A model generated the notes under the pieces. That model searched no databases. It saw only the letters and a list, made by a program, of their open reading frames with translations, and was not told where the DNA came from. This document shows positions 1,352-55,196 of a stretch of DNA of 64,000 nucleotides, piece after piece (the first letter of the stretch is position 1; each line of letters starts with the position of its first letter). A program made the translations under genes and the position numbers. The DNA lies in IMG/VR virus record IMGVR_UViG_3300017991_000048, positions 124,001 to 188,000 of that record. One strand, written 5' to 3'.

Positions 1352-1363
1352 ACTCTACACTTG
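1352..1363 (-). promoter_or_regulatory. putative phage promoter, GTGTA motif
   Basis: Minus strand CAAGTGTAGAGT, 6 nt before ATG 1345, no SD. Confidence 0.55.
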
Positions 1364-1391
1364 AAGATAACCCACACCAGGAGAATTACAA

Positions 1392-2111
1392 GTGCCGGTT
1401 ACGCCGTGCATTGGCGACGTTTGGGAGAATAAAGAAGTTGGTGTCGAGGGTATAGTAGTCAGTCTCAAAGGCACTCGTTTAACTCTCGTAAGCCTCACAG
1501 GGAATCGAGCGACCATCAACTATAATCCGGAAACACTGTTTGGAGCGGTATCAATTTGGTGCCGTAAGGAACAAGCACCTCTGTTCACAATGCCTTGCTC
1601 ACGGTTGACCTGCGATAACCCGGCATTTATCCAATACCGACGCCCTGACAGCACATTAGTTGAAGTGGTGTGCCCCTCTCACGTCCCTAAAAACATCGAA
1701 TCGTTTACAGGTATCCTTCCCGATGAAACAGAACGAAATCACTTTGGCGGCTCGAATTGCTGGACCCAAGGCTGTGGTCAGGATACCACAGAGGTCATTG
1801 GGGAGCTTCCATCCGGGGAAGGTTCCATGTGGAACTGCCAGACGTGCGGCAGTTGGTGGATTGTCAGAGTGCTTACTTTTGCAGAGTACGAGGATAGATT
1901 TGGGACACGCTCTCCGGACCGTATCTTAAAACCAAAGGCACTGGTAAGCGATCTTTCTGGGTATAAACTAATTGAAATAGAAGAAACTACGGATCTTCAA
2001 CGCCGTGAAATGCACTACAGAATCTCTATACAACCGAAAGGTAGCAAGCGTTTAAATGGTCCGCGCCCTCGTACCTTATATGATTACCTAAAGCTGCCCG
2101 ACGACTTTTAG
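1392..2111 (+). CDS. hypothetical Zn-finger-containing protein
   Basis: AGGAG SD before GTG; Cys pairs (CSRLTC..C.SH, CWTQGC, CQTC); C-terminal TLYDYL motif. Confidence 0.6.
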   Translation: MPVTPCIGDVWENKEVGVEGIVVSLKGTRLTLVSLTGNRATINYNPETLFGAVSIWCRKEQAPLFTMPCSRLTCDNPAFIQYRRPDSTLVEVVCPSHVPKNIESFTGILPDETERNHFGGSNCWTQGCGQDTTEVIGELPSGEGSMWNCQTCGSWWIVRVLTFAEYEDRFGTRSPDRILKPKALVSDLSGYKLIEIEETTDLQRREMHYRISIQPKGSKRLNGPRPRTLYDYLKLPDDF

Positions 2112-2143
2112 CCAGGATTTTCTTATGGGTGGCTTGTAATAAG

Positions 2144-3418
2144 ATGCCCACTGATCGCATGGCTAAGGTTGTAGTTTCTCGGTTCCTGGAAGCCCGTGCC
2201 ACCAAGAATTACGAGTTCCTGAACGGCCTCTTTAAGGATCTCAGAGAGGTCTGGCATAAACTTCCAAAAAGTAACTGGTGGGGTCCGGGCTATGCGAAGG
2301 TGTCTAAACCTGACTCCGAAATGTACGCGAAAGAGTTTGCCCGTGCGTCGGGTAAACTTCTCAAAGAACTTAAGTTTACAGCCGAAAACCCGTTCCTAGC
2401 CAAGGCGATAAAAAAGTACGAGGGTAAGCTTCGATTGCTCCGTAAGATGTTAAAAGCGTGGTCAGAGGCTAAAGATTATGAGGAACTTCAAGCGGTACTC
2501 GAAAGTCAGGGCACAAAGTCTAAGAATGCTTGGCAAAAATTCATTGAGTATGAAGATCGAGTGCTCGGTCTTATAAGAGGTCTTGACACTGAAGCTGAAA
2601 CCACCATCAACATGGGGCCATATCGAGTCACTTTGATGACCGCCCATCACGACGAGTGGGACGCGGAAAAAGTTAAGAGGCTACAATACGTTTTAGAAAA
2701 AGTAGACGGCACCTTATCCCGTATGGGCTTGAAGTCATTAGCCGGGGGTAAAGTGTTTGCTTTTCCATCCAAAAGAGTTCCAGGGAGTGGGGCTGCCTTG
2801 GCTACTTACCACACGCATCAAGGAGTATTTGAAATTGCCGCTGAAGGAAAAGTTGCTGACCTTATATCTGTTATGCTTCACGAGATGGGGCACAAGGCTT
2901 ATTACACTTTGGTTGAGGGGCGAGGGCGTACAGCGTGGTCAGACTTCTTTGAAGGCGGCTTGGGAACGCCTGACGTTGATTCCATTATCGAAACCTGGGA
3001 GCGTTCATTAGAAAAGATTGACAACGAACGCGATAGACATCGAGGGCGCTTTTTAGCTTACTATATGCAAGAGTTGATGCCAAAGGGTGATGAGGGGGAC
3101 GCCATGTGGCTGAACATGTTGGCCAGACAACTAGGTATCAAAGAAAAGTTCAATCCCTGGACCGGTGCAGTAAGTAAGAAGTCAGTTCCGGGTTTGGACC
3201 AACTCATAGCTAACCGACATAAGGCTAAAGTTTTCCTCTACCCTGTTACCGCGTACAGCGGCACCAACGCTTCAGAACTGTTTGCGGAGACGTTTATGGA
3301 TTATGCAACCGGAGGTGGTAGGCGTGTTCACCCTCTGGTCGCACATGCTTTCAGGATGACTTTGCCAAAGTTCAAAATGGCCCAGTTATTAAACGAGTTC
3401 CCATCCATTCGGGAATAA
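2144..3418 (+). CDS. zincin-like metallopeptidase-domain protein with N-terminal VVSRF tag
   Basis: MLHEMGH (HExxH) plus downstream YSGTNASELFAETF (third-ligand Glu motif); N-terminal KVVVSRFLEA; start ATG 2144 or GTG 2129. Confidence 0.65.
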   Translation: MPTDRMAKVVVSRFLEARATKNYEFLNGLFKDLREVWHKLPKSNWWGPGYAKVSKPDSEMYAKEFARASGKLLKELKFTAENPFLAKAIKKYEGKLRLLRKMLKAWSEAKDYEELQAVLESQGTKSKNAWQKFIEYEDRVLGLIRGLDTEAETTINMGPYRVTLMTAHHDEWDAEKVKRLQYVLEKVDGTLSRMGLKSLAGGKVFAFPSKRVPGSGAALATYHTHQGVFEIAAEGKVADLISVMLHEMGHKAYYTLVEGRGRTAWSDFFEGGLGTPDVDSIIETWERSLEKIDNERDRHRGRFLAYYMQELMPKGDEGDAMWLNMLARQLGIKEKFNPWTGAVSKKSVPGLDQLIANRHKAKVFLYPVTAYSGTNASELFAETFMDYATGGGRRVHPLVAHAFRMTLPKFKMAQLLNEFPSIRE

Positions 3419-3824
3419 AAAGTTCGGTTGTGAACCCAAACGACACCCAGTGACTGGGCTCTTCTGGAACCTGTGGCGGCTTGCCGACGAGTTTGATTTT
3501 GTTAAATAATAGACCACACTGTTTGGCTATTTTGGTTGGATCTGGCCATTTTTTGCACTCTTCAAAGATAACATCTGCAACTTTATTAAATTGTTCAACT
3601 ACCCAATCCTCATGGCCGCGAGGCGCAAAAAAGTAGACATGATCTTGCACTGTACCGAAAGTTAGGGCGGAAATGAGTACAGCTTCTAACAACTCAGAGT
3701 CTAAGGTTTGGTCTGAAACTCCCCGAAATTTTGGGAACTTTTCATAAAAGCTGAGTTGCTTTGGCGTGGCTTCCCTGCTCAATAAAATCTGATGCCTTTT
3801 GCGAATTGGTGTATTAGTTGCCAT
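3372..3824 (-). CDS. hypothetical protein
   Basis: About 150-aa ORF; GTGTA motif 6 nt before ATG 3824. Confidence 0.5.
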   Translation of the reverse strand: MATNTPIRKRHQILLSREATPKQLSFYEKFPKFRGVSDQTLDSELLEAVLISALTFGTVQDHVYFFAPRGHEDWVVEQFNKVADVIFEECKKWPDPTKIAKQCGLLFNKIKLVGKPPQVPEEPSHWVSFGFTTELFIPEWMGTRLITGPF

Positions 3825-3830
3825 GTTCAA

Positions 3831-3841
3831 ACCCTACACCA
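3831..3841 (-). promoter_or_regulatory. putative phage promoter, GTGTA motif
   Basis: Minus strand TGGTGTAGGGT, 6 nt before ATG 3824. Confidence 0.5.
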
Positions 3842-3955
3842 AATTGAAGTTCTTGTGATAATAAACCTCCAAAAACAGCAACTTTAACGTCAAGTGCTGA
3901 ACTTGAAAGGAGGGTGTGTTGATTCATGCACTGACGGTACAACATAGGAGACTAT

Positions 3956-4801
3956 ATGAGGTACTTAAACTTAATCCTGTTTTGTGTAATCGCGTGTTCC
4001 AGTTCCGTCGCTCAGGACGTGAACCCACCGGAGCCACGTCTAGTTAAAAGACAGGAACCGATATTGTTTGAACCCGAACCCGAACCTAAAGCACCCGAAC
4101 CTCGTAAATCAGTTAGAAAGAGCCAACTCGAACTTGAGTGGCTAACCAAGATTTGTGTAAGTGAGGGCGGCTTCAACTACGATGAATGTGAGAAGATTCT
4201 ACAGACGTTAGAAAACATGAAAGAAGAGCATGAGCGTTCTCTTTTATCTATCATGTATGCCCAGTCTTCCCGTGTCACTCGCCAGAAGCCATTTACAAGC
4301 ACCCGCCAAATTTGGGTAAGCCATCTGCCAATGCAAGGTAAGAAGCCACCAGAAAAGGGGTGGGTTGAGTGTAAAAAGAAAGGCGTTCCCAAAGGGTGTA
4401 CCGGCTCATGGTTCACCACATTGAAGAAATGGCTTCCGTTCCGGGATAAGGTTCGTGAGCTTTATTACAGCGAGATCGTTCCGGAGCCGATACCGGGCCG
4501 TCCCATTCAATGGGGTGGTAATATGGACTACTGGATCGGGGTTGGCCGTAATTTCTGTCCGTTGAACAAAGGTGGTCTGTGGAAAAATACTTACTGGGGG
4601 AACCCAGATGACCCTGCCAATGAGGGTAAATGCTTGCCTATTTGCCAAAAGAGGGTCAAAAGCAGTAGAGTGCTATCAGCGGCTATTGCCAGCGGGAGAG
4701 CCAAGCAAAAGCCTCGAATCCAACAGTTACTAAATGGTGATCCCTTTATCCAGGATCTCAATAAAGGAGGGGTTACTGATGACGGAACAAGAACTGACTG
4801 A
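3956..4801 (+). CDS. exported protein, possible SleB/Hydrolase_2-like cell-wall hydrolase
   Basis: AGGAG SD; hydrophobic signal peptide (LILFCVIACSSS); Pro/Glu linker; LTKICVSEGG resembles the L-x-x-I-x-x-E catalytic helix of SleB-like transglycosylases. Confidence 0.4.
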   Translation: MRYLNLILFCVIACSSSVAQDVNPPEPRLVKRQEPILFEPEPEPKAPEPRKSVRKSQLELEWLTKICVSEGGFNYDECEKILQTLENMKEEHERSLLSIMYAQSSRVTRQKPFTSTRQIWVSHLPMQGKKPPEKGWVECKKKGVPKGCTGSWFTTLKKWLPFRDKVRELYYSEIVPEPIPGRPIQWGGNMDYWIGVGRNFCPLNKGGLWKNTYWGNPDDPANEGKCLPICQKRVKSSRVLSAAIASGRAKQKPRIQQLLNGDPFIQDLNKGGVTDDGTRTD

Positions 4802-5240
4802 ACTCCAGGCTCGTTGTATCAGCGCCAGAGCATACGCACGTAAGATCGCCAACGCGGAATATTATGGTGCTGAGTTGGAGATGGAAACCGGACCGGTCCC
4901 ACCTCCGATTGGAAGCCCAAAGTATTCTGCCACCCATTTGCTTGTTCTTATAGACAGAGCTTTTAAGATCCGACAAGGCTTGGAGCAGAAGGCCCCAGAA
5001 CCTAAAGCTGAAAAGCCCAAGGCCAAACCCAAGCCTAAGAAAGCCCCGGAGAAAAAGGCTGCGGCTAAGAAAAAGCCCGAACCTAAGAAAAAAGCTGAAA
5101 AGAAGAAAGTAGCTGCCAAGGCTAAGAAAGCGGCTCCAGCTAAGAAGGCTGCGGCAAAAAAGAAGAAAGCTGCCAAGAAAGCGGCTCCAGCTAAGAAGAA
5201 AGCTGCACCTAAGAAGGCTGCCAAGAAGAAAAAGAAGTAA
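4779..5240 (+). CDS. histone H1-like Lys/Ala-rich DNA-binding protein
   Basis: AGGAGG SD before ATG 4779; C-terminal half is a K/A/P-rich tail (KKAAPAKKAAAKKKK), with a 24-nt direct repeat at 5124 and 5175. Confidence 0.75.
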   Translation: MTEQELTELQARCISARAYARKIANAEYYGAELEMETGPVPPPIGSPKYSATHLLVLIDRAFKIRQGLEQKAPEPKAEKPKAKPKPKKAPEKKAAAKKKPEPKKKAEKKKVAAKAKKAAPAKKAAAKKKKAAKKAAPAKKKAAPKKAAKKKKK

Positions 5241-5242
5241 CT

Positions 5243-5464
5243 TTAGTACCTATCGTAGTGGTACTCTTCCCACATTTCATCCCAGTGGGCATGATGCTCT
5301 GCGGCACATTCTCGGCAAAGTGGGATCGGGGCGTTGGGATCGGGTATCTTATCGTCATGGATAAGCGCCATCCAGAGAGTGTAAGGTTTCTGAGCATAGG
5401 CTGTGCGGGAATCTTCCAATCTAACATTTTTATCTGACCCGCATCCTCGACAAATCATCGTCAT
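5243..5464 (-). CDS. small Zn-finger protein
   Basis: CRGC...CREC...HH; ATGA overlap with upstream stop; contains TLWMAL. Confidence 0.55.
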   Translation of the reverse strand: MTMICRGCGSDKNVRLEDSRTAYAQKPYTLWMALIHDDKIPDPNAPIPLCRECAAEHHAHWDEMWEEYHYDRY

Positions 5465-5934: not shown

Positions 5935-5950
5935 AGGATTTCCTGTATAA

Positions 5951-5961
5951 ATATTACACCG
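5951..5961 (-). promoter_or_regulatory. putative phage promoter CGGTGTAATAT
   Basis: 16 nt before ATG 5934 with AGGA SD; divergent partner at 6015. Confidence 0.65.
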
Positions 5962-6014
5962 ATTGCTATAAAAGTGAGAAAAATAACGTGTTAGAATTGA
6001 GTTTTAAGGTTCTC

Positions 6015-6025
6015 CGGTGTAATAG
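6015..6025 (+). promoter_or_regulatory. putative phage promoter CGGTGTAATAG
   Basis: 17 nt before ATG 6043 with AGGAGG SD. Confidence 0.65.
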
Positions 6026-6042
6026 TTAGTAGGAGGTCAATT

Positions 6043-14082: not shown

Positions 14083-14093
14083 TGGTGTAATAG
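14083..14093 (+). promoter_or_regulatory. putative phage promoter TGGTGTAATAG
   Basis: 5 nt before ATG 14099. Confidence 0.6.
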
Positions 14094-21526: not shown

Positions 21527-22501
21527 TTAACCCTTCAGGGCTTGTTCATACTCGCTCAATAAACGCTGGAATTCGGAGTAGGGGTCATAAAAAGTCTTAC
21601 CCGGCTCGAACTTTACGGCAAACCCCGCAGCTTGAGTGTGACCACCGCCGCCCTTAGATTTGCAGAACTGGCCACAGTTAAAATCCGTATGGGAGCGGGT
21701 TGAAAAGCTCAGGGTGGCAAGCTCATTTGAGTCTACCCCAATGTACTCAAAACCTACTACTAAGTCGGCTTCATCGTGGAGAGCCTCAGCCGCATCGCTG
21801 CTGTATCTGGCTCCAGGGAAAAGGACGACTCTGGTGCCGAATGGGGTTGTGAACCTGTGAGCACCCTCAACAGCCTTTTCAACATCCCGTTCCAAGCGCT
21901 CTACAAGGATCTGCCCCACTGCCCGTCGATAGTCCCACCAGTCACAAAATTCCCGTGAAAATATCGGCTTTGAACCTGCTATAGTTAGCCACCCCTCTTC
22001 TGGGAAAAACCGTAATGTTTCAGAAAGGATGCAAGCCTTTTTCCAGTCCGGGCTCTGTCTCTGCCACGTGTCACGAATTCCTGTCAGATAGGCTAGCTCC
22101 CGTGCAAGGGAGCACTCATACCGGTTGTCCTGCAAAGGTAACCAAACTTCGTGGAAGGCCAAGACCGCCCCGCAGACCCCCGGCTGGAACAGTTCGTCTC
22201 CGAATACCCCATTCTCCCCGAACGCCTCAACAATCGGCTGTGCTGTCTTATGGTGGTCCAGGATCAGAGCGCCAGCTTCTATGAATTCCTTGTACCTGCT
22301 AGGGTGTGGGGAAAAGTCGCAGAATAACATACCCGGCTCTGGTTCCAACTCCAGGTGCTCCGGGGTATCGTATTGAATGAACCGGACCTCTACATGAGGC
22401 AGTGCGTTTTTACAGAATATGGCAGACGCAAGGCCATCAGCACATGAAGCATGTGAGACGACGATCTTGACTGCATTTAGTTTGTCCGTTGCTAAAGGCA
22501 T
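21527..22501 (-). CDS. DHH/DHHA1 family phosphoesterase
   Basis: HASCADG, FCDFS, LDHHKT, RDTW, STRS, GGGGHTQAAG. Confidence 0.88.
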   Translation of the reverse strand: MPLATDKLNAVKIVVSHASCADGLASAIFCKNALPHVEVRFIQYDTPEHLELEPEPGMLFCDFSPHPSRYKEFIEAGALILDHHKTAQPIVEAFGENGVFGDELFQPGVCGAVLAFHEVWLPLQDNRYECSLARELAYLTGIRDTWQRQSPDWKKACILSETLRFFPEEGWLTIAGSKPIFSREFCDWWDYRRAVGQILVERLERDVEKAVEGAHRFTTPFGTRVVLFPGARYSSDAAEALHDEADLVVGFEYIGVDSNELATLSFSTRSHTDFNCGQFCKSKGGGGHTQAAGFAVKFEPGKTFYDPYSEFQRLLSEYEQALKG

Positions 22502-22505
22502 GTCT

Positions 22506-22516
22506 ATATTACAGTT
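22506..22516 (-). promoter_or_regulatory. putative phage promoter variant AACTGTAATAT
   Basis: 4 nt before ATG 22501. Confidence 0.45.
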
Positions 22517-22531
22517 GAGCGCCCCGATCCT

Positions 22532-22759
22532 CTAGCCTATTAGATGATCCCAGAGAGTTTTTCTCGCGGCTCGCTTGAGAGGGATAATCAAAGTCGCTCC
22601 GTCAAGCATCTGATACAACAACTGTGTTTGTTCAGGATCAATCCAGGCACGATCAGCTTGACGAAGCGCCGTTAACCCTTCTGACGATACTCTTGACATA
22701 GGCACTGACATTTCAGGCTGATCGTGCCGGTCTTTAACTGTTTTCCATCCGGGCTTCAC
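22532..22759 (-). CDS. small hypothetical protein with C-terminal TLWDHL
   Basis: GTGA overlap; ends RKTLWDHLIG. Confidence 0.55.
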   Translation of the reverse strand: MKPGWKTVKDRHDQPEMSVPMSRVSSEGLTALRQADRAWIDPEQTQLLYQMLDGATLIIPLKRAARKTLWDHLIG

Positions 22760-27990: not shown

Positions 27991-28001
27991 GTATTACACC
28001 G
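27991..28001 (-). promoter_or_regulatory. putative phage promoter CGGTGTAATAC
   Basis: 6 nt before ATG 27984. Confidence 0.65.
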
Positions 28002-32441: not shown

Positions 32442-32452
32442 ATATTACACCG
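32442..32452 (-). promoter_or_regulatory. putative phage promoter CGGTGTAATAT
   Basis: 9 nt before clpX ATG; embedded in inverted repeat ACACCG-N7-CGGTGT (32447-32465). Confidence 0.65.
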
Positions 32453-32488
32453 AAAAAGCCGGTGTCAAGATCATTACATCCGCTTTTA

Positions 32489-37772: not shown

Positions 37773-37783
37773 TTATTACACCG
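37773..37783 (-). promoter_or_regulatory. putative phage promoter CGGTGTAATAA
   Basis: 16 nt before ATG 37756 with AGGAGG SD. Confidence 0.65.
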
Positions 37784-42342: not shown

Positions 42343-43823
42343 TAGACATCCATAGCTTCGATGTACTCATTGTACTCATCAAGGGTTTCAACGGAGATCC
42401 CTTTAGGTTCCACCTTTTGGGGCGAGAGGATACGACGGCAAGGGAATAATATATGCGCCTCAAAGGGGTCAAAAAGCGGGTTGTCTCGATTTTTAAGGTT
42501 TGTGAACTTTGTCCGTCCTGCTGTCCTCAAGGCATCGTTCAAATAAGTTGTCGTGATAACATCAGCGCTTTTCTCAGCGGCGTTGGCATAAGTAAGTGCT
42601 TTGATCTTATAAACCCCCTCGTTTTTATCGGCATCGTCTTTTCCTTGTCGGTTGATCTGGAAAAGCATAAGCACTGGGACGCCATTATTATGATCAAAAT
42701 GCAATGCGAATTGCTTGGCATCGTTTATAACGGAGTTAAGTTCGATCGTGTAGTCTTTATTTCGACGGCTTTTCCGGGCCTCGATCCATTGCCCGTGGTC
42801 CAATATAACCATACCCACTTCGAACTCTTTGTGTAATAATTCGATTTGAGCCGCCACATCTTCCATATCCCACGGACGGTCAGGAGTCACCACCTCATAG
42901 GTAGTGTAGTTGGGGTTACTTTCCCAGTCCGGTTTTACGTGGTTAAAGTAAAAGTCCTTTTCTTCCGTGGTAAGCTTCCCGTCACGGATACCTTCATAAT
43001 CTAGAGGCTTGAACCCTTTCAAAGCAAACTTGGCATTCGCACTATGAACCGTAAAAATGTTACGGCGGATCTGAGCGTAGGGCATCTCAAAGGAAACATA
43101 GACCACATTTTTCTTGAATCTGGTAACAGCCTCGTAGCCCCAGTTCACTGCAAAGGTGGTTTTAAGTTCTGAAGGAAAGGCCGCGTGTATCCATAACTCA
43201 CCCTTCTTGACTCCTTTACAAGCGTCGTCTATTTCATTGATCCCTGAAAGCACCCCATAAACACGACTCTTGTCGCTTTCAGCAGCTTCATACTCTTCCA
43301 CCATCTCCTGGCCGTCTTTACGGACATCCCCATGAACTCTCACATTCGTGTCTACAACCCGGATCTCCTGAGAGCGTTTGGTAAAATGCAGGATGGCGTC
43401 TTCCAATCCCTTACGGACCGTTTTCTTTTTCTTGTCCTCAACGCCTTTGATGAGAATATCATGTGTCTCTTTGAGGAGAGCTACAGCTTTAACTTTGGCT
43501 TGGCTCTCCTGTAATGTACGCAACAGGTGAACAAAGTTTGTACGAGCGTAAGGGCGGTAGGTTTGGACATCTTTTAAGCGCTCAACAGCCTCTACTCCGC
43601 TGTTTTCCACAAAGTAGTCGAGGACGGTTTGAGCAGACGGCATCTCAAAATGCTGAATGAAGAAACCTAATATGTATTTGAAAATCTGGTCATCTTCCGG
43701 ACGGCTCCATTCAAATTGCCCTATATCAACCGCTTTACGAAGAAGTTGAAAATTGCGAACGAGGTTTTCCGGGGAAACCTCTTTGTCAAACTCTATAACA
43801 GATCGTAATAATCGTGTGGGCAT
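42342..43823 (-). CDS. DnaB-like replicative helicase
   Basis: SGINEIDDACKG.KKGEL, AAFPSELKTT (variant Walker A), YVSFEM, VILDH, LFQINRQG, AEKSADVI, LKNRD. Confidence 0.85.
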   Translation of the reverse strand: MPTRLLRSVIEFDKEVSPENLVRNFQLLRKAVDIGQFEWSRPEDDQIFKYILGFFIQHFEMPSAQTVLDYFVENSGVEAVERLKDVQTYRPYARTNFVHLLRTLQESQAKVKAVALLKETHDILIKGVEDKKKKTVRKGLEDAILHFTKRSQEIRVVDTNVRVHGDVRKDGQEMVEEYEAAESDKSRVYGVLSGINEIDDACKGVKKGELWIHAAFPSELKTTFAVNWGYEAVTRFKKNVVYVSFEMPYAQIRRNIFTVHSANAKFALKGFKPLDYEGIRDGKLTTEEKDFYFNHVKPDWESNPNYTTYEVVTPDRPWDMEDVAAQIELLHKEFEVGMVILDHGQWIEARKSRRNKDYTIELNSVINDAKQFALHFDHNNGVPVLMLFQINRQGKDDADKNEGVYKIKALTYANAAEKSADVITTTYLNDALRTAGRTKFTNLKNRDNPLFDPFEAHILFPCRRILSPQKVEPKGISVETLDEYNEYIEAMDV

Positions 43824-44674
43824 TATACGTCCGGTAAACCATTCTTACGCTTTTTATACTGCTCGTAGGGCTTACGCTGCTTTTCAGGGATTTCGATAGT
43901 GTCTGCATCCAACATACGAGATCCCTTTTCCAAAGTTTCACTCTTGGTTACTTCTATCCCAGGCCCCATGGCAATTTCATTGTCAAAAGCCTCTTGCGCC
44001 TCAACCTTCTTTATCTCCCGTAGCTCTTCTACGTTCCCACCCAAATCAATAATGTCGAAGTTCTCGCCTATATAACTGTTTACTTTCTCACTATATGTAG
44101 CGCTATCATGCGAAAACCCGTCATCTCCTGCAATGATCCAGGTAGCTTTACGGCGGCGTCTACGAATTGTAAGGGCTTCATATAATACATCTGGCATCGC
44201 TCTATTTCGTTTTACTGCTCCCAGGTACAAAATTACCAAATCAGGGTCGGAAAGTAAGTCGGAAAGACAGTTATTGGTTTCAATAACGTTTCGAACCCCC
44301 GATGGTCTAAGGTCGTATCTCTCTTTGCCAAGCCAAACATTGAGCAGACGATCATCATCCATAATTTTGAAAGCAAATTCGGGAGAGTATAAATACTTGC
44401 CCGACAATACCCAACGAAGGTGTCGGCAAACGATTTCCCATGTTCCTTTGAGAAATAAGTCGTCCGTTGTTCTATCTACTGGGTCGTTTTCACTGGGAGC
44501 ATAGAGCGGAGACTTTTTTACCCATTTAGCATTATAAACATCAGAGTTACCGATGTACTCTTGAAATAGTTTCTTCTCCAAGCACTTACAGCGCTTAGGA
44601 ACAACCACTTCATCCTTGCACTCGTAAAGCCACTGTTTTCCTTTACACAGTGGGCAAGTTTTTTCTTTAGTCAC
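43823..44674 (-). CDS. DnaC/IstB-like helicase loader, degenerate ATPase
   Basis: N-terminal CPLCKG..W...CKC; DLVILYLG and RRRRKATWI match the DnaC layout, but Walker A/B are lost; directly upstream of DnaB. Confidence 0.55.
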   Translation of the reverse strand: MTKEKTCPLCKGKQWLYECKDEVVVPKRCKCLEKKLFQEYIGNSDVYNAKWVKKSPLYAPSENDPVDRTTDDLFLKGTWEIVCRHLRWVLSGKYLYSPEFAFKIMDDDRLLNVWLGKERYDLRPSGVRNVIETNNCLSDLLSDPDLVILYLGAVKRNRAMPDVLYEALTIRRRRRKATWIIAGDDGFSHDSATYSEKVNSYIGENFDIIDLGGNVEELREIKKVEAQEAFDNEIAMGPGIEVTKSETLEKGSRMLDADTIEIPEKQRKPYEQYKKRKNGLPDV

Positions 44675-46445
44675 GGGTACTTTCTACACCAGAACGCAAG
44701 CGTTTAATTAGCTGCTTGGCGAAGCTGCCCTCCTCTTCGAAGTCAAGAGCGCCGACAGCGGACTCGCCTAAAACCTTGTCTATCAAGGCTTTCTTGCGTT
44801 GGAGAATCTCCAATGTGTAGTGGTCGATAGTTTTCTTCGGGTTTCCGGGACGTTCCGCAACAAGATGGATGGCAACTACGTGCTGATGGGGAGAGCCTAT
44901 TCGAATCGGACGCCCTAATAACTGGACATAATTTCCCCATGACCACGGGGCGTTATAGGCGATCAGAACCTTGGCGGCTTGGAGATTGATAGACTCTGAG
45001 CCAGCATCAGAGATAAAGATAACCCGAACCTTTGATTTCAAGTCCTGGAAGGCTTCCATGGCTTTTTGTCGGGCCGGGTTTTTCTTGGTGTCTACAACCT
45101 TTCCAGTGATAGCGGTGGACTCGATCCCGGCCTTTTTGCAAAGCTGTTGAAGTCTCGGAACCAGAGAGGCAAAGCGTGTATACACAATTACCTTCTCTTC
45201 ATCGAACTCGCCTGTCAGAAGGTCCATGAGCGCCTGTTCCTTTGAACTAAGCTCAGTGACTTTCGCCTGCTCATCATGGTACATATCAACATCGATAAGA
45301 TCCCCCTCTTCATAACGAAGCAAATGCAAGGAATCCACAGTCTGCTGACAATAGATAAGGGCTACGAGTTTCTTATGTTCTTCATAATCCCTGACCTCAC
45401 CGTCGCCAAGTTCCAAAATACCAGTCAGAGCCTCATCGTACTTGGCGTCTTCGGCGGCTGTTAGCTCAATCAGCACCTCTCTTGTGATAAGCTTTGGCAA
45501 CTCGTTAGAAATGAGATGCTTGGCGCGGCCCAAAAAGAACGGGTCAATACGTTTACGGAAAAGTTCCAGGTTTTTGTAACCGGTAATAATCGGAATCTGG
45601 CGTCGTGTTCCAGTCTTTGTGACTACCGGCTGCATCCTTGTGGTGCAGAACTGGCCCATGAACTTTGTCTTGGTGGTGAAGACACCAGGGTAGATACACT
45701 TATAAATGGCGAAGCCTTCGATCAGGTTGTTTTTCAGAAGGGTTGCCGTCATCCCATAACAGCGATTGGAACGATCCGCCAACTCCCAACACACTTGCCA
45801 AGTCTTGGTCCTCTCGTTCTTGAACGCAGTGCATTCATCATAAGTAATGCTAAGGGCCGGTATGCCTTTGGTGATCCCGTCCAGCAAACCAGGAGTAGCT
45901 GGAGCTTTCATATCCGGTTGTCCGTTTGCTTTTAACGGTCTTTTGGCTCCTTTGCCCCAGTCCCGGACCAGTGAAGCATAACCTATGACCATAATGGCTT
46001 TTTCGTCTCCACTGTGGGCTGCAAAAGCCTTATATGTTGCTTTTCGTTCCTCTGCGGTCCCTTCTACTAGATAAACCTTGATCCCTGTTGTAAACCTGTA
46101 AATCTCGGCTCTCCACTGTCTGAGAGCACTTTTAGGGGCTACCACTATGACTTTATTCTCTGGTTCCTTCTGCCACGCATAACAATGAGAGGCGATTGCG
46201 ATTATGGTTTTACCGGTCCCGGTGTCGTCTCCCAGAACAAACCGCTTCATTGAGATCAGGTGGAAAACCGCCTGAACTTGATAATACCGGAGCTTGAAAG
46301 GCTTCTCGTCTCCGTTCAAATCGACAAACTCTGACCGGAGCATTGAGGTCGGCTTCAGAGAAACCTTCGTACTGGCGCGAACCTTTTGGAGAAGTTCATA
46401 AACCTTCGCGTGTTTAGCCAGTAAGTCTTCTTTTTTGGAGGCCAT
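44667..46445 (-). CDS. SNF2-family helicase/ATPase
   Basis: LRYYQ, LGDDTGTGKT, VVAPKS..QW..E, YDEC, MTATLLKN, SKEQAL, DAGSESINLQAA, QLLGRPIRIG. Confidence 0.9.
   Translation of the reverse strand: MASKKEDLLAKHAKVYELLQKVRASTKVSLKPTSMLRSEFVDLNGDEKPFKLRYYQVQAVFHLISMKRFVLGDDTGTGKTIIAIASHCYAWQKEPENKVIVVAPKSALRQWRAEIYRFTTGIKVYLVEGTAEERKATYKAFAAHSGDEKAIMVIGYASLVRDWGKGAKRPLKANGQPDMKAPATPGLLDGITKGIPALSITYDECTAFKNERTKTWQVCWELADRSNRCYGMTATLLKNNLIEGFAIYKCIYPGVFTTKTKFMGQFCTTRMQPVVTKTGTRRQIPIITGYKNLELFRKRIDPFFLGRAKHLISNELPKLITREVLIELTAAEDAKYDEALTGILELGDGEVRDYEEHKKLVALIYCQQTVDSLHLLRYEEGDLIDVDMYHDEQAKVTELSSKEQALMDLLTGEFDEEKVIVYTRFASLVPRLQQLCKKAGIESTAITGKVVDTKKNPARQKAMEAFQDLKSKVRVIFISDAGSESINLQAAKVLIAYNAPWSWGNYVQLLGRPIRIGSPHQHVVAIHLVAERPGNPKKTIDHYTLEILQRKKALIDKVLGESAVGALDFEEEGSFAKQLIKRLRSGVESTRD
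44681..44691 (-). promoter_or_regulatory. putative phage promoter TGGTGTAGAAA
   Basis: 6 nt before GTG 44674, inside the 3' end of the SNF2 gene. Confidence 0.45.
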
Positions 46446-46453: not shown

Positions 46454-46464
46454 ATCTTACACCG
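46454..46464 (-). promoter_or_regulatory. putative phage promoter CGGTGTAAGAT
   Basis: 8 nt before ATG 46445, at the head of the replication operon. Confidence 0.6.
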
Positions 46465-50678: not shown

Positions 50679-50682
50679 AAAA

Positions 50683-53600
50683 CTAAACCTTTCTAGCTAA
50701 CTGGATCGTGGACGGATCGATAAGCATCTTGACATTATTACTTACCATCGGGTGTCCCTCGATACGGTACAGATCCGCTGCTGAGTATCCTTCACCATCA
50801 CCATTGGTTCCGATGAGAATGGTGGAAGGGTCATTCGCAACTGAAGGAGGTCGCGTTACATTTGTTATCACCAACAACATTAGCTCATCGCCAGCCGATA
50901 CCTCATTGGAACCGACATTCGTAACAGTGTTACGGACTAACATGGCTCTACCTTGTATTGCGTTTACATTGGTTGAAACCACGTTACTCATTGCGTTTTG
51001 CAATGAAACAGAGCCGCCAGGATGAGGCCCAGAAGCTGTAAACACAGAGCCGCCCCGGAGCACACGGAAGTTGGTTAGCAGCGAGTAGTTGCCCTGCTCC
51101 CCGTCCACATGAACCAGAACATCACCAGGATCTCCGATCCCTGAAGACGCTGTGCTCAGATTGACTTCATCTTGCTCTATTTGGCTATCAGCCGCCAATC
51201 CTGTCGAGCTACCGCTTCCCACAACATCCTCAAGTACCAGTGTTGCAGGCATCAAAGACGAGTGGATTTTACCGCGAAAATCTTTGTCACGCCAAAGCGC
51301 TCCCAAAGGTAGCCGTTCAGAACAGCCAAGATACTCCGTTCCGATGTTAAGAGCGTCACCAGAAACAAAGTTCTTGGGCAGCGACTTGGGCCTGTCAGCA
51401 ATTGCTGTGCTTGGCGGGTAGACCGTGGGGTCTTCATAAGCCACATTGGTGAAGGTGCCCAACTCTCCAGGCAGTGCAGCGTAGGAAGCATCCCCGGAAT
51501 ACCGTCCGGTGCCAAGGGTTGTGGAAAACCCTACAGACGCCAGTATTTCTAACACCTTCTCATTGGGCCGCGTGAGGGTATCATAATCCAAGTCTGTAGA
51601 ATCAATCTCATACGCTGTGCCTGACGTTAACGGCCCCGGCGCATAAGGTATGTCAATGTAACTCGTCTGACTGCCCCAAGCGTCTCCTTGGTACGGAGTC
51701 CGAGAGTAATTGATCAGGATCTGATCCGATTGCTCAGCAGGCCCCGGCAAAACACAAGTAGGCAACGGAACCACCTTATTAATGTTATCTTCGCGGTTCG
51801 GGTTGGTCTGAGGATCAGTGCCGTCTCCAACAAGATTCCAACCATTGAGATTTCCCGGACGGGTCATCACCAAACGAAATTCTGAGTCTAGGTCAAACGA
51901 GCCACGATCAAACCCAAAGATCACCGCTTCGACAACATATTCTCCCGACTGGAAATCAGCGATCGGCACGGGAGATTTTGTAATATCGATTGCATTCGCA
52001 TTAAGAATGAACGTCGAGTCTCCGTCGTCATCGATTTCAACCCATAAAGGTGGACCGTCCGACTGAGGCACTGATTGGCGAAGTAAATTTACAGCCGTAC
52101 CCGTGCCGCCCGTGTCACGTTGTAAAGTAAATGGGCTGTCATTGGTTGTGTAATCAGAGGCTTCATACACGCCGAAAATCCGAGCGACCCCATAAAACGG
52201 CGGGAACTCCAACCCCTCCCGATCATAACCTCGCGTGTCGGTAAAGAATCGAATACCACACCAATCGTTACCCCCGATGCCAGTCCCGATAGTATTATAT
52301 GGAATAGGCGTGGAAGCATTGTCCACCTGACTGAAGATAGAATACTCTCTTGTGCCGCCTGCATTTCCGTTAAAATAAGCAGCATATGTAAACTGTTCAG
52401 CCGTTGGCGTACCGGGAAGACTTCTGATCATAAAGTCGATGCCACTTGCAAACGTTGTAGTTCCAACGGTACGAATTGGAACCTGTACTTCTCCCCACCC
52501 CGGCATTAGATGACGAGGTAAGGACACATAAATGTTCTTCTGTGTCGCGATGCTGTGAGTTTCACCACAGAACAAGCCCAAAGGATCAGTAGTTGCCCAC
52601 TTTGGAGTTACGCCATCCGGTTCGAAGAGAGGCATAACTCCTTGCGCGTCGTGGACTGTATACGAAACAGCAACCCCTGCTTGAGCGCGGATAGGACGAT
52701 CCAACGTGTAAGCCGTTGGAGCCACAGATAGAATTGTATACCGACCGGCACCCGGCCCTGACGGAATAACTAAAGCGTCTCCCCCGGCAGCGGGGGCTGT
52801 CCCACTACCGTCATTCAGGATGGGATCATTGAGTCCGTTAGTAACTCCTGTAGCGCTGGTCTTTTTCGCAGTTGGGACAGGGTTCGCAGCGTCTCCATCA
52901 ACTGTTAACGGACCTGTGAAATCCAAACGGCGGAAAGGAGTGACTAAAACAGTCTTGCTTCCAAGGTCTGCGTACATCTCAGAAGTCACAGGAAGCAGGT
53001 TGTTGAATGTGGCCGAGCGGTACTTGCTCCATAAAGGAGCCCAGGCCACTCTTGCCCCTAAATTACTAGAAGGAGCACCCCACTGTTGGGTGAGTATGTC
53101 TGCTCCTGGATTAAGATATGAAATCGAATGCAGCGAATCAGGTCGGCGGGACAAGCCGCGTCCCGGACCATACACCGCGTGAACCTTAATATGCAAATAA
53201 GTTGGGGCGGCAGTTGTCGTGGTTTGTGTTGGAAAGTCTGGACCCAATGTAATGGTCAAATCATCATTTGGACCTGGAACTGCGGGGGTTACCGTGTACA
53301 TCGAAGGCGGCAAATCGCCTGTCTCACCGTCAAGCCGAAGAGACACAGACCCAGACAAACTGTCATATAGCCATCGTACCTGATCTGTTGCTCCAGCCTG
53401 AAACCCCGTCTTGAGCTGGTTTACGGGGATTACAATTATGTCACCGCTTTGAAAGGCGTTAGCCGCCTGTTGGTTTATCGTTTGAACTGTCAAACCAAGG
53501 GACCAATTTACGTCAATGTCAACACCGGGACCAGGAGGTACGATACCGGTACTTGGTTCAACCACGCACTCAATAGGCTGAAGAGTAGCCGCGTCTGAAA

Positions 53601-55038
53601 ACACCATACGAATGTTGTCCGGTGCATCTAACTGAGTGACGCCCAGAGACACCGCAGCCGACTGAATCGCATCTTGATAATGGACAAAAGAGCCTTGAGG
53701 ACCAGCACCAGTGCGCTTCCAGTTAGCTCTAAGCTGCCCACGCAGAAGCTTGTCGAGGTTGTTTCTAAGAAGCGCCGTATAATCCATACCGTTAGGATTA
53801 ACCAAATGCCTAAGGTCTAAGATATCCGTATTGGCAACCTGATCTGCATACAACCCATCTGGACGACCTGACACCACTGTAATCACGGACCCTGCCGTAT
53901 GTGCTTCCGCGAGAGTTCCGTTAGCACCACGAGTTATGCCACTTATAGTGGTTCCCGTGATTGAGGTATAGGTCATAATCTCGTCGTTGATCTTGATCGT
54001 AACCGCTGTTGCGGGTGTGGTGGGCAACGGTATATCGGTTGCCGACACAAGGGTTGCCGACGTGTCAGAATCCGTCATCGCGGCGTCTAACGTAGGAACT
54101 GTCGAAAAAGTGGCGACCCCTGTGCGATCGACCGCTGTAGGATTTCGGTCAAAACTGCCATTAAGATTCTGAGAAGGGGTGCCATTCCATACGACTGTAT
54201 TACGACGGAAAACAACACAGATAGGAACGGCGTAAGAATAACCATCCACAGTGCCCAGATCATTCTGACTACCATCACCGGCTCTCCATAGCCCTGGATC
54301 ACCAAGTGTCTCTCTCATGTTCTCAAAAACATAAGCGGTAGGAGCAGAAGCCGCACCCTGAGCCTTAACAACAACAGGATCAAACCCATCGGGATTTGTT
54401 GTCAACCCTACTAACCCTTTGACAACACGAATGCGATATTGAATCTGAACTCTTTGCTCAGTCTCAAACCCCAACGCCGGGTCAATAAGGTCGTCAGATA
54501 GGAAGCTGTAACCACCTTCGACATTCCCATACTTATAAATAGCGCTCGCAGATGGCTTATTAGTAGTAGACGGGTCAGGTTGAATCCGAGCTTTCCAAAC
54601 TTCCAGGAAAGCAAAGTCGATACGGAAATCCCCTGAATTCTCCGGAGGTGGGTCCAGAGCTATGACATTAGTCGTATCGGTATCATCAGGTGACCCCGGA
54701 GGTGTTCCCGTCCGAGTCCCTGTAACCGGAATAAGCCATCCATTGACGTTAGCCCACATGATGGACTTCTGCTCGCCGGTTCTTTGTGGGCCAAACTTAA
54801 ACCAATTTGACCAGATGGAACTTGTAAGAAAGTCGGCCTGCGGGTTGGTTTCATTACCCAAGAATCCTGAAGGCATGTCACGCAAAAGAGCCGCCTGTAC
54901 GGACCTACCCGCCAACTGTTGCATTAGATTCAATGCTGCGTCAGTCGGTGGCTTCCCTTCTTGCCAAATAGCGAGTTGGTACGCCGTTTCATCAGCCAAA
55001 AGAACTCTGGATACCCCGGAACCAAAATTGTCTGTCAT
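50683..55038 (-). CDS. large virion structural protein (tail/baseplate-associated)
   Basis: 1451 aa, G/T/P/D-rich beta-type composition; N-terminal WQEGKPP.DA.LN..Q and DFAFLEVW pattern, plus TIKINDEIMTY..RGANGT.A.AH.AG module seen in tail proteins. Confidence 0.65.
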   Translation of the reverse strand: MTDNFGSGVSRVLLADETAYQLAIWQEGKPPTDAALNLMQQLAGRSVQAALLRDMPSGFLGNETNPQADFLTSSIWSNWFKFGPQRTGEQKSIMWANVNGWLIPVTGTRTGTPPGSPDDTDTTNVIALDPPPENSGDFRIDFAFLEVWKARIQPDPSTTNKPSASAIYKYGNVEGGYSFLSDDLIDPALGFETEQRVQIQYRIRVVKGLVGLTTNPDGFDPVVVKAQGAASAPTAYVFENMRETLGDPGLWRAGDGSQNDLGTVDGYSYAVPICVVFRRNTVVWNGTPSQNLNGSFDRNPTAVDRTGVATFSTVPTLDAAMTDSDTSATLVSATDIPLPTTPATAVTIKINDEIMTYTSITGTTISGITRGANGTLAEAHTAGSVITVVSGRPDGLYADQVANTDILDLRHLVNPNGMDYTALLRNNLDKLLRGQLRANWKRTGAGPQGSFVHYQDAIQSAAVSLGVTQLDAPDNIRMVFSDAATLQPIECVVEPSTGIVPPGPGVDIDVNWSLGLTVQTINQQAANAFQSGDIIVIPVNQLKTGFQAGATDQVRWLYDSLSGSVSLRLDGETGDLPPSMYTVTPAVPGPNDDLTITLGPDFPTQTTTTAAPTYLHIKVHAVYGPGRGLSRRPDSLHSISYLNPGADILTQQWGAPSSNLGARVAWAPLWSKYRSATFNNLLPVTSEMYADLGSKTVLVTPFRRLDFTGPLTVDGDAANPVPTAKKTSATGVTNGLNDPILNDGSGTAPAAGGDALVIPSGPGAGRYTILSVAPTAYTLDRPIRAQAGVAVSYTVHDAQGVMPLFEPDGVTPKWATTDPLGLFCGETHSIATQKNIYVSLPRHLMPGWGEVQVPIRTVGTTTFASGIDFMIRSLPGTPTAEQFTYAAYFNGNAGGTREYSIFSQVDNASTPIPYNTIGTGIGGNDWCGIRFFTDTRGYDREGLEFPPFYGVARIFGVYEASDYTTNDSPFTLQRDTGGTGTAVNLLRQSVPQSDGPPLWVEIDDDGDSTFILNANAIDITKSPVPIADFQSGEYVVEAVIFGFDRGSFDLDSEFRLVMTRPGNLNGWNLVGDGTDPQTNPNREDNINKVVPLPTCVLPGPAEQSDQILINYSRTPYQGDAWGSQTSYIDIPYAPGPLTSGTAYEIDSTDLDYDTLTRPNEKVLEILASVGFSTTLGTGRYSGDASYAALPGELGTFTNVAYEDPTVYPPSTAIADRPKSLPKNFVSGDALNIGTEYLGCSERLPLGALWRDKDFRGKIHSSLMPATLVLEDVVGSGSSTGLAADSQIEQDEVNLSTASSGIGDPGDVLVHVDGEQGNYSLLTNFRVLRGGSVFTASGPHPGGSVSLQNAMSNVVSTNVNAIQGRAMLVRNTVTNVGSNEVSAGDELMLLVITNVTRPPSVANDPSTILIGTNGDGEGYSAADLYRIEGHPMVSNNVKMLIDPSTIQLARKV

Positions 55039-55185
55039 ATCTTTTACCTTCTGATTTAATCCTGACGAAAGCCTGTCGAAAGGGTTAAATTATAGGGACT
55101 TTCGCAATAGGGGTTGTGCTCCTGGTACACCAACCTCAAAAGTGTTATTTAAAAAGGGGGAAATTCTAGAGTTTTTACCCCTCTC

Positions 55186-55196
55186 AAGTGTAATAT
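55186..55196 (+). promoter_or_regulatory. putative phage promoter AAGTGTAATAT
   Basis: 4 nt before ATG 55201, no SD. Confidence 0.55.

What the first reader, a model, noticed from the sequence alone, without database searches (positions are those of the whole stretch)
1352..55196. Recurrent (C/T)GGTGTAATA promoter-like motif with bimodal spacing that implies many leaderless mRNAs
Seen: 12 copies, always oriented with and just upstream of a start codon (1345, 3824, 5934, 6043, 14099, 22501, 27984, 32432, 37756, 44674, 46445, 55201), including a back-to-back pair at 5951/6015. After GTG-TAnnnn the distance to the start is 4-9 nt with no convincing SD in nine cases, and 16-17 nt with AGGA(GG) in three. 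It heads replication, ClpX, AAA and metabolic genes and never the RY/RF-tagged units. It does not fit the sigma70 TGn extended -10. Inference: an early/middle promoter read by a phage sigma factor or RNAP, producing largely leaderless transcripts.
Basis: partly seen in the sequence, partly recalled or inferred. Interest (0 to 1): 0.62.

Follow-up and report, generated by a model that had tools for sequence, protein, structure and literature searches.

The report
Phage promoter motif giving leaderless mRNAs
A short DNA word (CGGTGTA) sits 14-18 bases before the start codon of dozens of non-structural genes in this 398-kb uncultured phage and its relatives. It is most likely a one-piece promoter read by a phage-encoded sigma factor, so that the messages begin at or next to the AUG.

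Summary
All 12 copies are at the stated places, and the 4-9 versus 16-17 nt spacing reproduces exactly. YGGTGTAATA occurs 7 times in the window against 0.05 expected. Across the 398-kb genome, GGTGTA is the most enriched hexamer in non-coding DNA, points at gene starts, and peaks 14-16 nt before first-in-frame ATGs.

Close-spaced copies lack a Shine-Dalgarno (SD) sequence; distant copies often have one. The conserved core is CGGTGTA, not the 10-mer. Two of the 12 copies belong to a second class that adds an upstream TAGAGTTT box.

The core-to-ATG architecture is conserved in at least five related huge-phage genomes of 43-64% GC (41-101 copies against 4-10 controls). There, divergent genes can lie about 34 bp apart with abutting motifs.

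I found no phage RNA polymerase. A conserved 329-aa protein outside the window has a sigma domain-2 fold and sequence signal, and it occurs in every strongly motif-enriched relative.

Best reading: a single-element promoter read by host core polymerase plus this phage sigma, giving leaderless or near-leaderless mRNAs. It resembles phiEco32 gp36 promoters combined with phiYS40-style leaderless expression.

No RNA data exist, so transcription start sites and timing are inferred.

The parts
1355..1361 (-). Degenerate class-A copy AGTGTAG, 15 nt before ATG 1345 (142-aa DnaJ-domain protein, 917-1345)
3834..3840 (-). Class-A copy GGTGTAG, 15 nt before ATG 3824 (150-aa ORF 3372-3824); no SD
5952..5961 (-). 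Class-A copy CGGTGTAATA, 25 nt before ATG 5934 (nucleoside 2-deoxyribosyltransferase-like); AGGA in the leader; divergent partner of the 6015 copy
6015..6024 (+). Class-A copy CGGTGTAATA, 26 nt before ATG 6043 (DUF932 protein); AGGAGG would lie at the predicted 5' end of the transcript
14083..14092 (+). Class-A copy TGGTGTAATA, 14 nt before ATG 14099 (RNase HII); no SD
22506..22534 (-). Class-B composite TAGAG-N15-CTGTAATAT, 13 nt from the position before TGTA to ATG 22501 (324-aa protein with a weak DHHA1 match)
27992..28001 (-). Class-A copy CGGTGTAATA, 15 nt before ATG 27984 (DUF1848 protein); no SD
32443..32452 (-). Class-A copy CGGTGTAATA, 18 nt before ATG 32432 (ClpX-like AAA+ ATPase); no SD
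37774..37783 (-). Class-A copy CGGTGTAATA, 25 nt before ATG 37756 (57-aa ORF); AGGAGG in the leader
44684..44690 (-). Class-A copy GGTGTAG, 15 nt before GTG 44674 (283-aa ORF 43823-44674); lies inside the 3' end of the helicase gene
46455..46463 (-). Class-A copy GGTGTAAGA, 17 nt before ATG 46445 (SNF2-family helicase); GGTGTA precedes the ortholog's ATG at 14-19 nt in all 20 related loci except L029, where a motif-ATG site lies about 1.6 kb upstream of the partial match
55167..55196 (+). Class-B composite TAGAGTTT-N13-GTGTAATAT, 13 nt before ATG 55201 (779-aa DUF5050-containing protein)
58125..58134 (-).

Best explanation
CGGTGTA(R) is a single-element, -10-type promoter with no -35 box. It drives a large share of the non-structural genes of this 398-kb phage and its clade.

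Host core RNA polymerase is probably directed to it by a phage-encoded, very divergent sigma70-family protein. That protein is 329 aa and lies at genome 396078-397067(-), outside the window. Its own gene appears to be transcribed from a host-type TTGAC(A/T/G) promoter with a long leader.

Initiation 6-8 bp after the element would place +1 on or within a few nt of the A of the AUG, which lies 13-18 nt from the G of GTGTA. The mRNAs would then be leaderless or nearly so and would be translated without SD pairing. Where the element lies farther away (21-60 nt), a normal SD-led mRNA results.

Shown: motif statistics, orientation, spacing, SD exclusion, the -1 pyrimidine, clade-wide conservation, and the sigma-like fold with its co-occurrence.
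For: Enrichment and direction:
- Searches show the enrichment over chance.
- Density is 3.5 per kb in non-coding DNA against 0.19 per kb per strand in coding DNA.
- In '--' gaps, 30 copies are minus-oriented and 5 plus-oriented. In '++' gaps the split is 10 to 3. Convergent gaps hold only 4.

Spacing and start-codon context:
- First-in-frame starts peak at 14-16 nt (35 sites), with a minor SD-bearing group at 21-27 nt.
- At 13-18 nt there are 48 sites; 39 use ATG and 2 have an SD-like core.
- Among unambiguous starts, SD occurs in 0/17 with the motif against 56/142 without, p=7e-4.
- A pyrimidine at -1 is enriched, as in the Y-1/R+1 start rule: p=1.6e-5 in G000 and 1.4e-3 in G005.
- Pfam Metallophos domains begin at residue 1 of two motif-led proteins, which confirms those starts.

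No room for anything else:
- Divergent genes carry TACACC-N0-36-GGTGTA. In G005 the two motifs can abut, leaving about 34 bp between CAT and ATG. That leaves no space for a -35 box or a leader.

Conservation:
- GGTGTA-N8-10-ATG against its reversed-pattern control: 49 vs 7 (G000), 49 vs 6, 41 vs 10, 75 vs 4, 48 vs 6 and 101 vs 7 in five relatives.
- It heads the helicase ortholog in genomes of 43-68% GC.

Canonical promoters are not the answer:
- Two-hexamer sigma70 promoters are not enriched: 14 against 18.2 +/- 4.

Candidate reader:
- The family has 48 members, and 22 of 47 individually hit Pfam Sigma70_r2, best E 1.1e-5.
- The AF2 model has pLDDT 85.
- About 18 of the top 25 structural matches are sigma domain-2 chains, at Z 5.8-7.5 and rmsd 2.4-3.5 A over 70-88 residues. 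They include the T4 gp55 complex and a phiEco32 gp79/gp36 complex.
- The gene is present in G001-G005 and absent from the motif-less Tunturi_5.
- It has no GGTGTA upstream, but TTGAC(A/T/G) lies upstream in 4 of 5 genomes.

Precedent:
- phiEco32 gp36 reads the single element tAATGTAtA, with the start site 6-8 bp downstream (PMC8948821).
Against: - No RNA run holds this phage, so no start site is mapped.
- Sigma assignment rests on weak sequence scores (E 0.05 for this member; profile against PDB E 0.5), a non-significant Foldseek search and middling Z values.
- Co-occurrence of gene and motif lies within one clade, so it is not independent evidence.
- LR745208.1 shows mild motif enrichment (25 vs 10) with no detectable homolog.
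- The host is unknown, so a host sigma with this specificity is not excluded.
- The 13-18 nt spread means some transcripts must carry 1-5 nt leaders, or the start sites must vary.
- SD use is low overall (39%), so lack of SD is only moderately discriminating.
- Class B (TAGAGTTT box) is unexplained and specific to this genome.
Confidence: 0.6

Rival explanations
1. The motif is read directly by the host's own primary sigma factor, as an unusual extended -10-like promoter of an unknown host lineage. Leaderless expression would then be a host habit, as in Deinococcus-Thermus. The phage sigma-like protein would serve other promoters, for example late ones.
For: A -10 element adjacent to ORFs is a known host expression mode (PMC12340547). 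P23-45 middle and late promoters are -35-less extended -10 promoters read by host sigma A (PMC3950348). T(-12)A(-11) of a -10 hexamer can be aligned with the TA of GGTGTA. LR745208.1 has mild enrichment without the sigma-like gene.
Against: TG abuts TA instead of TGn, and the -7 T is not conserved in the 60% GC relative. The same 7-mer is kept across phages of 43-68% GC, whose hosts presumably differ. The one bacterial MAG that carries a related contig shows no genome-wide enrichment, 23 vs 17. The sigma-like gene co-occurs with the motif.
Confidence: 0.2
2. The motif is the promoter of an unrecognised phage-encoded RNA polymerase, either single-subunit or a very divergent two-barrel enzyme.
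For: A short promoter close to the start site, followed by G-rich bases just before the ATG, recalls phage polymerase promoters. Several large ORFs have no annotation, including 1724 aa and 1428 aa.
Against: There is no PF00940, Rpb2_6 or Rpb1_2 signal. No DFDGD-type catalytic motif occurs in a plausible ORF. The largest ORFs are tail fibre or helicase, or carry no polymerase signal. The PF00940 control rang in no genome, so that particular negative is weak.
Confidence: 0.07
3. The motif acts at the RNA level inside longer transcripts. It could be a non-SD ribosome-recruitment or termination-reinitiation signal, or a processing site that trims mRNAs to near-leaderless forms.
For: The distance to the AUG is fixed. 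GGUG can pair with the CACC of the 16S 3' tail. In G005, 26 of 105 motif TAR triplets double as the stop codon of the upstream gene.
Against: Divergent gene pairs with abutting or near-abutting motifs have no upstream transcript to act on (7 divergent gaps with both orientations). Spacing of GGTG to the AUG is 12 nt, which is too long for SD-type pairing, and the following TA does not match GGUGAUC. Copies at 25-26 nt sit upstream of a true AGGAGG. The -1 pyrimidine fits a start-site rule.
Confidence: 0.08

Closest known systems
phiEco32 gp36 sigma-dependent middle/late promoters (tAATGTAtA)
   Same: Both are single conserved elements of about 8-9 bp containing TGTA, with no -35 box. In phiEco32 the element is read by host core polymerase plus a divergent phage sigma, with the start site 6-8 bp downstream (PMC8948821). 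The same offset from CGGTGTAAT would land on the AUG here. A phiEco32 gp79/gp36 complex chain is among the structural matches of the sigma-like protein.
   Different: The sequence differs (CGGTGTA against AATGTATA). There are 40-100 copies per genome instead of six. The element is positioned to give leaderless mRNAs. The candidate sigma is 329 aa with an insertion of about 130 aa inside domain 2 and an uncharacterised C-terminal domain. No biochemical proof exists.
Thermus phage phiYS40 leaderless middle/late mRNAs
   Same: This is a large phage in which most middle and late transcripts lack a leader and are still translated (PMC3594737).
   Different: From my memory of Sevostyanova 2007, which was not readable here, phiYS40 uses host sigma A at -10-type promoters. 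The present motif is not TAnnnT-like in GC-rich relatives. No IF1 or IF3 homolog is encoded here.
Deinococcus-Thermus '-10 motif adjacent to ORF' (TANNNT)
   Same: A promoter -10 element lies a few bp upstream of the ORF, with a strict spacing requirement, and gives leaderless mRNAs alongside a separate class of SD genes (PMC12340547).
   Different: That is a host-genome feature read by host sigma A. Here the element is GGTGTA with no conserved -7 T. It is phage-specific and is conserved across phages of very different GC content.
T4 late promoters (TATAAATA) read by gp55
   Same: An 8-bp -10-only element is read by a minimal phage sigma that has only a domain-2-like part. The gp55 complex (7d7d_F) matches the model at Z 6.6, rmsd 2.5 A.
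   Different: T4 late promoters serve late structural genes and need gp33 and the sliding clamp (from my own knowledge). Here the motif avoids the structural block and heads replication and metabolism genes.
Extended -10 (TGnTATAAT) promoters, e.g. P23-45 middle/late
   Same: They are independent of a -35 box, with a TG-containing extension upstream of TA (PMC3950348).
   Different: Here TG abuts TA with no spacer base, and the rest of the hexamer is not conserved.

Membership tests
Single-element promoter read by a phage-encoded sigma (phiEco32 gp36 type) | One conserved element near -10 and no conserved -35 element | tested here: met
   Class-A alignments show information only at (t)tyGGTGTAr. 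Divergent motifs abut within about 34-60 bp gaps.
Single-element promoter read by a phage-encoded sigma (phiEco32 gp36 type) | The phage encodes a sigma70-family protein | tested here: met
   The 329-aa ORF family: 22/47 members hit Sigma70_r2, and sigma domain-2 structures dominate the VIA matches at Z 5.8-7.5. Support is moderate and not decisive.
Single-element promoter read by a phage-encoded sigma (phiEco32 gp36 type) | Transcription starts 6-8 bp downstream of the element | not testable with these tools
   No RNA run holds the phage. The geometry and the -1 pyrimidine are consistent.
Single-element promoter read by a phage-encoded sigma (phiEco32 gp36 type) | Host core polymerase plus phage sigma initiates specifically at the element | not testable with these tools
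   This needs in vitro transcription.
Single-element promoter read by a phage-encoded sigma (phiEco32 gp36 type) | The sigma lacks a DNA-reading region 4 | tested here: inconclusive
   C-terminal residues 247-328 are helical with no sigma-4 sequence or fold match. Separate tandem sigma-4-like proteins exist elsewhere in the genome.
Extended -10 sigma70 promoter (TGnTATAAT) | TG lies one base upstream of a TAnnnT hexamer | tested here: not met
   TG abuts TA. In G005, T at the would-be -7 position occurs in 11/105 sites.
Leaderless mRNA genes | The promoter element lies so close to the start codon that no SD-bearing leader fits, SD is absent, and AUG is preferred | tested here: met
   48 sites at 13-18 nt, 39 ATG, 2 SD-like; SD 0/17 against 56/142.
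Leaderless mRNA genes | A mapped primary 5' end at or within a few nt of the AUG | not testable with these tools
   Only DNA metagenome runs hold the sequence.
Promoters of phage-encoded RNA polymerases (T7-like, phiKZ/AR9-like) | The phage genome encodes a recognisable single- or multi-subunit RNA polymerase | tested here: not met
   PF00940, PF00562 and PF00623 give no hits; there is no catalytic DFDGD-type motif; the large ORFs are not polymerases. The PF00940 control rang nowhere, so that negative is weaker.
Shine-Dalgarno / ribosome-binding site | Complementarity to the 16S 3' tail at 5-10 nt from the start | tested here: not met
   Only GGTG could pair, and it lies 12 nt from the AUG. 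True AGGAGG occurs downstream of the motif in the long-spacing copies.

The most novel reading that the evidence does not exclude
A clade of uncultured huge phages (about 400-530 kb, 43-68% GC) carries its own previously undescribed sigma family, whose domain 2 is split by an insertion of about 130 aa. This sigma reads the 7-bp word CGGTGTA and places the transcription start on the AUG of 40-100 genes per genome. The result would be a phage-sigma-driven, genome-wide leaderless expression programme, compact enough for two divergent promoters to abut. It could give the phage a translation channel separate from SD-dependent host mRNAs.
Probability: 0.45. Interest if true: 0.7.

Novelty: new variant of a known kind. 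Interest (0 to 1): 0.6.

Why it matters
Transcription signals of uncultured huge phages are essentially unknown. This work supplies a simple, testable promoter word, a candidate sigma factor to express, and a rule (motif at 13-18 nt means the next ATG is the start) that would improve start-codon and operon annotation across a whole clade.

If confirmed, it would be the largest leaderless regulon driven by a phage-encoded sigma. It would also give a minimal portable promoter/sigma pair, and a handle on how huge phages separate their translation from the host's.

Tried and rejected
- RNA evidence: the look-up of sequencing runs found only four DNA metagenome runs (sediment, seawater) and no RNA. 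Read laying was therefore not used, because contigs cannot show 5' ends.
- Literature by sequence: a search for GGTGTAATA returned only unrelated primer hits.
- Host identification: the helicase search of genome contigs gave one 2.7-kb contig in a Parcubacteria MAG. It is probably a mis-binned phage fragment, and the MAG as a whole is not motif-enriched. NCBI copies of the sigma-like protein sit in uncultured-phage assemblies.
- Nearest cultured relative: Tunturiibacter phage Tunturi_5 has neither the motif nor the sigma-like gene.
- Canonical sigma: there is no region-2 hit above threshold. The strong Sigma70_r4 hits are tandem HTH proteins without region 2.
- Phage RNA polymerase: negative.
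- Foldseek against PDB for the sigma-like model gave no significant match; sigma E ranked first at E 0.5. The VIA wide search was more informative.
- Class B in relatives: absent from five genomes.
- Phage IF3 or IF1 that might favour leaderless translation: none.
- Reading the element as TAATAT at -12 to -7 was rejected as the general model, because GC-rich relatives lose everything after GGTGTA and class B would leave only 4 nt to the ATG.
- The phiYS40 primary paper (PMC1885378) is not held.
Full report
**Context**

The window is bases 124001-188000 of a single 398,071-bp virus record with direct terminal repeats, estimated complete, at 48.4% GC. The nearest GenBank records are an uncultured 485-kb phage (LR745208.1) and, more distantly, the Acidobacteria jumbo phage Tunturi_5. 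Twenty IMG/VR contigs of up to 529 kb and 43-68% GC carry a helicase ortholog at 51-76% identity. The sequence occurs only in DNA metagenomes from sediment and seawater.

**Observation**

- Measured from the G of GTGTA, the start lies at 13-18 nt in nine cases and at 25-26 nt in three.
- Those three (5934, 6043, 37756) carry AGGA or AGGAGG.
- YGGTGTAATA occurs 7 times in the window against 0.05 expected.

**Genome-wide statistics**

- GGTGTAATA occurs 31 times against about 3.4 expected.
- An unbiased hexamer count ranks GGTGTA first for enrichment in non-coding DNA, with 76 of 217 copies in 5.4% of the genome. CTAGAG and the SD-like TAGGAG also rank high.
- Density is 3.5 per kb in non-coding DNA against 0.19 per kb per strand in coding DNA.
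- Orientation follows the downstream gene. Gaps between minus-strand genes hold 30 minus-oriented and 5 plus-oriented copies. Gaps between plus-strand genes hold 10 and 3. Convergent gaps hold 4. Divergent gaps hold 30, and seven gaps carry both orientations.
- The distance to first-in-frame start codons of ORFs of at least 45 aa has a sharp peak at 14-16 nt (35 sites) and a low shoulder at 21-27 nt.

**Anatomy**

Class A has the consensus t-t-y-G-GTGTA-r-T-a and no conserved -35 region.

A second class of about 28 sites, mostly in genome 1-114 kb, reads TAGAGTTT-N6-cGCTGAr-nTGTAATAT-N4-ATG. The window copies at 22501 and 55201 belong to it. Class B is absent from five relatives and remains unexplained.

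**Link to translation signals**

- Of 48 catalogued sites at 13-18 nt, 39 use ATG and only 2 have an SD-like core. At 21 nt or more, about half have one.
- Among ORFs whose start is unambiguous, SD-like cores occur in 0/17 with the motif against 56/142 without (Fisher p=7e-4).
- Many of the SD-less remainder are stop-start coupled genes.
- The base before the ATG is a pyrimidine in 26/31 motif-led starts against 159/366 others (p=1.6e-5). In relative G005 the figures are 29/39 against 189/398 (p=1.4e-3). This is the Y(-1)R(+1) signature expected if transcription begins at the A of the AUG (the start rule is from my own knowledge).
- Pfam Metallophos domains begin at residue 1 of two motif-led proteins, which confirms those starts.
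- In the 26-nt copy at 6015, initiation at the usual offset would put AGGAGG at the very 5' end of the mRNA.

**Conservation**

- In the 20 related loci, GGTGTA is followed by the ATG of a long ORF at 14-18 nt in 57 cases, against 0-8 per position elsewhere. It precedes the helicase ortholog in 19 of the 20 loci.
- Whole-genome counts of GGTGTA-N8-10-ATG against the reversed-pattern control are 49/7 (this genome), 49/6, 41/10, 75/4, 48/6 and 101/7.
- In the 59.5% GC relative G005 the consensus shrinks to cCGGTGTA. Nothing after the A is conserved, and T at a would-be -7 position occurs in 11/105 sites. Spacing peaks at 14 nt.
- In G005, divergent gene pairs show CAT-N11-TACACCGGTGTA-N11-ATG, with 12 pairs at 0-32 nt between motifs. 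This genome has eight such pairs.
- Divergent genes cannot share a transcript. A gap of about 34 bp leaves no room for a -35 box or a leader. This is the strongest sequence argument that the word is a promoter and that the mRNAs are leaderless or nearly so.
- In G005, 26 of 105 motif TAR triplets also serve as the upstream gene's stop codon. This shows how tightly the element is packed.

**Genes served**

The motif heads a DnaJ-domain protein, a nucleoside deoxyribosyltransferase-like protein, DUF932, RNase HII, DUF1848, ClpX and an SNF2 helicase in the window. Elsewhere it heads metallophosphoesterases, a SpoU methylase, an NAD-dependent DNA ligase, a Pol X-like polymerase, a SmaI-like endonuclease and an HNH protein.

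Copies are sparse in the roughly 188-340 kb minus-strand block that holds tail-fibre and other large virion genes. G005 shows the same gap at about 273-424 kb. This fits a non-late class, but timing is inferred.

**Who reads it**

No T7-like or multisubunit RNA polymerase was found.
- Pfam screens were negative. The PF00940 control rang in no genome, so that negative is weaker.
- No DFDGD-type motif lies in a plausible ORF.
- The largest ORFs are tail fibre or helicase, or are unannotated without polymerase signal.
- Canonical two-hexamer sigma70 promoters are not enriched: 14 against 18.2 +/- 4.
- No ORF has a clear sigma region 2. The strong Sigma70_r4 hits are proteins made of two or three tandem HTH domains.

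One weak region-2 hit led to a candidate: a 329-aa ORF at genome 396078-397067(-).
- It has 48 full-length homologs (38-75% identity) in huge-phage-like contigs. JGI labels one of them a sigma-24 family protein.
- 22 of 47 members individually hit Pfam Sigma70_r2 (best E 1.1e-5). The next family is hit by 7 members.
- The family profile's best PDB hit is S. aureus sigma B over regions 2.1-2.2, at a non-significant E of 0.5.
- The AlphaFold model has pLDDT 85.
- Foldseek gave nothing significant, though sigma E ranked first.
- The exhaustive VIA search returned sigma domain-2 chains in about 18 of the top 25 rows, at Z 5.8-7.5 and rmsd 2.4-3.5 A over 70-88 residues. They include sigma B, RpoE, SigK, sigma E region 2, sigma 28, the SigC Pribnow-box domain, the T4 gp55 complex and a phiEco32 gp79/gp36 complex.
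- The matched residues are about 8-65 plus 196-225. This implies a sigma-2 domain interrupted by an insertion of about 130 aa.
- The gene is present in G001-G005. It is not detected in Tunturi_5, which shows no motif enrichment (5 vs 3), nor in LR745208.1, which shows weak enrichment (25 vs 10).
- Its own upstream region lacks GGTGTA. It carries TTGAC(A/T/G) about 70-110 nt upstream in four of five genomes. That is what one expects of an early gene read by host holoenzyme.

**Comparison with known systems**

- The closest functional analogue is phiEco32. Its sigma gp36 reads the single element tAATGTAtA with the start site 6-8 bp downstream and no -35 box (PMC8948821). The same offset from CGGTGTAAT lands on positions 13-15, where the ATG lies here.
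- Leaderless phage messages are known from phiYS40 (PMC3594737).
- A -10 element next to the ORF is a host habit in Deinococcus-Thermus (PMC12340547).
- -35-independent extended -10 phage promoters are known from P23-45 (PMC3950348).
- The jumbo phages AR9 and phiKZ use their own polymerases and have no leaderless mRNAs (PMC5312081, PMC8244752).

The present case differs in three ways: the recognised word, its scale (40-100 copies per genome over a whole clade), and the unusual sigma-like protein.

**Verdict**

I rate the case as a new variant of a known kind (a phage-sigma single-element promoter combined with leaderless expression), with interest 0.6.

Noticed in passing
window 22506-22534(-) and 55167-55196(+); about 26 further copies, mostly genome 1-114 kb (e.g. 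L053:14093-14125): A second, longer promoter-like class, TAGAGTTT-N6-cGCTGAr-nTGTAATAT-N4-ATG, places the ATG only 13 nt from the position before TGTA. It is specific to this genome and absent from five relatives. Its reader is unknown.
   Followed up: partly
genome 326201-326845(-) = L003:1174-1818:- ; genome 38118-39308(+) = L004:757-1947:+: Two proteins are built of two and three tandem sigma70 region-4-like HTH domains, without region 2. The 214-aa one is 64% identical to its homolog in relative G005, which is more conserved than the helicase. It could be a transcription factor or a trans-acting sigma-4 partner of the sigma-2-like protein.
   Followed up: partly
genome 239848, 256324, 277146, 307408 (minus strand; outside the window): A few structural-block genes are preceded by TTAGATC-N5-AAATGTAAA followed by a long leader with AGGAG. 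This may be a late-promoter word that also contains TGTA. There are too few copies for statistics.
   Followed up: no
L066:6619-19832 and L067:3529-7773 (genome about 366.6-387.8 kb, minus strand): A cluster of 37 tRNA genes is interspersed with small ORFs, several of which start 14-17 nt after a GGTGTA that immediately follows a tRNA 3' end.
   Followed up: partly
L052 (JBAZMT010000161.1, 2.7 kb) and contigs C21, C158 of the same MAG: A Parcubacteria-group MAG contains short contigs with the clade's helicase (55% identity) and local GGTGTA-ATG pairs. These are probably mis-binned phage fragments, not host evidence.
   Followed up: partly
G005 (L032-L051), e.g. around 101010, 58199, 102891: Divergent genes lie only about 31-40 bp apart with the two motifs abutting (TACACCGGTGTA). 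In 26 of 105 sites the motif's TAR is the stop codon of the upstream gene.
   Followed up: yes
window 32443-32475(-): The ClpX copy is preceded by TTGACA 15 nt upstream of the TA and by a small inverted repeat CACCG-N7-CGGTG that includes the motif. A similar TTGACT arrangement occurs at genome 354802(-).
   Followed up: no
L030 (Tunturi_5, PP885688.1): In this distant cultured relative, the most common pentamers 5-24 nt upstream of starts overlap to give GTAGGTTGA-like words rather than GGTGTA. This may be its own start-proximal signal.
   Followed up: no
L066:18415-19134:- (genome 378415-379134): A SmaI-type restriction endonuclease homolog (Pfam E 2e-50) is led by a class-A motif inside the tRNA region.
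   Followed up: no
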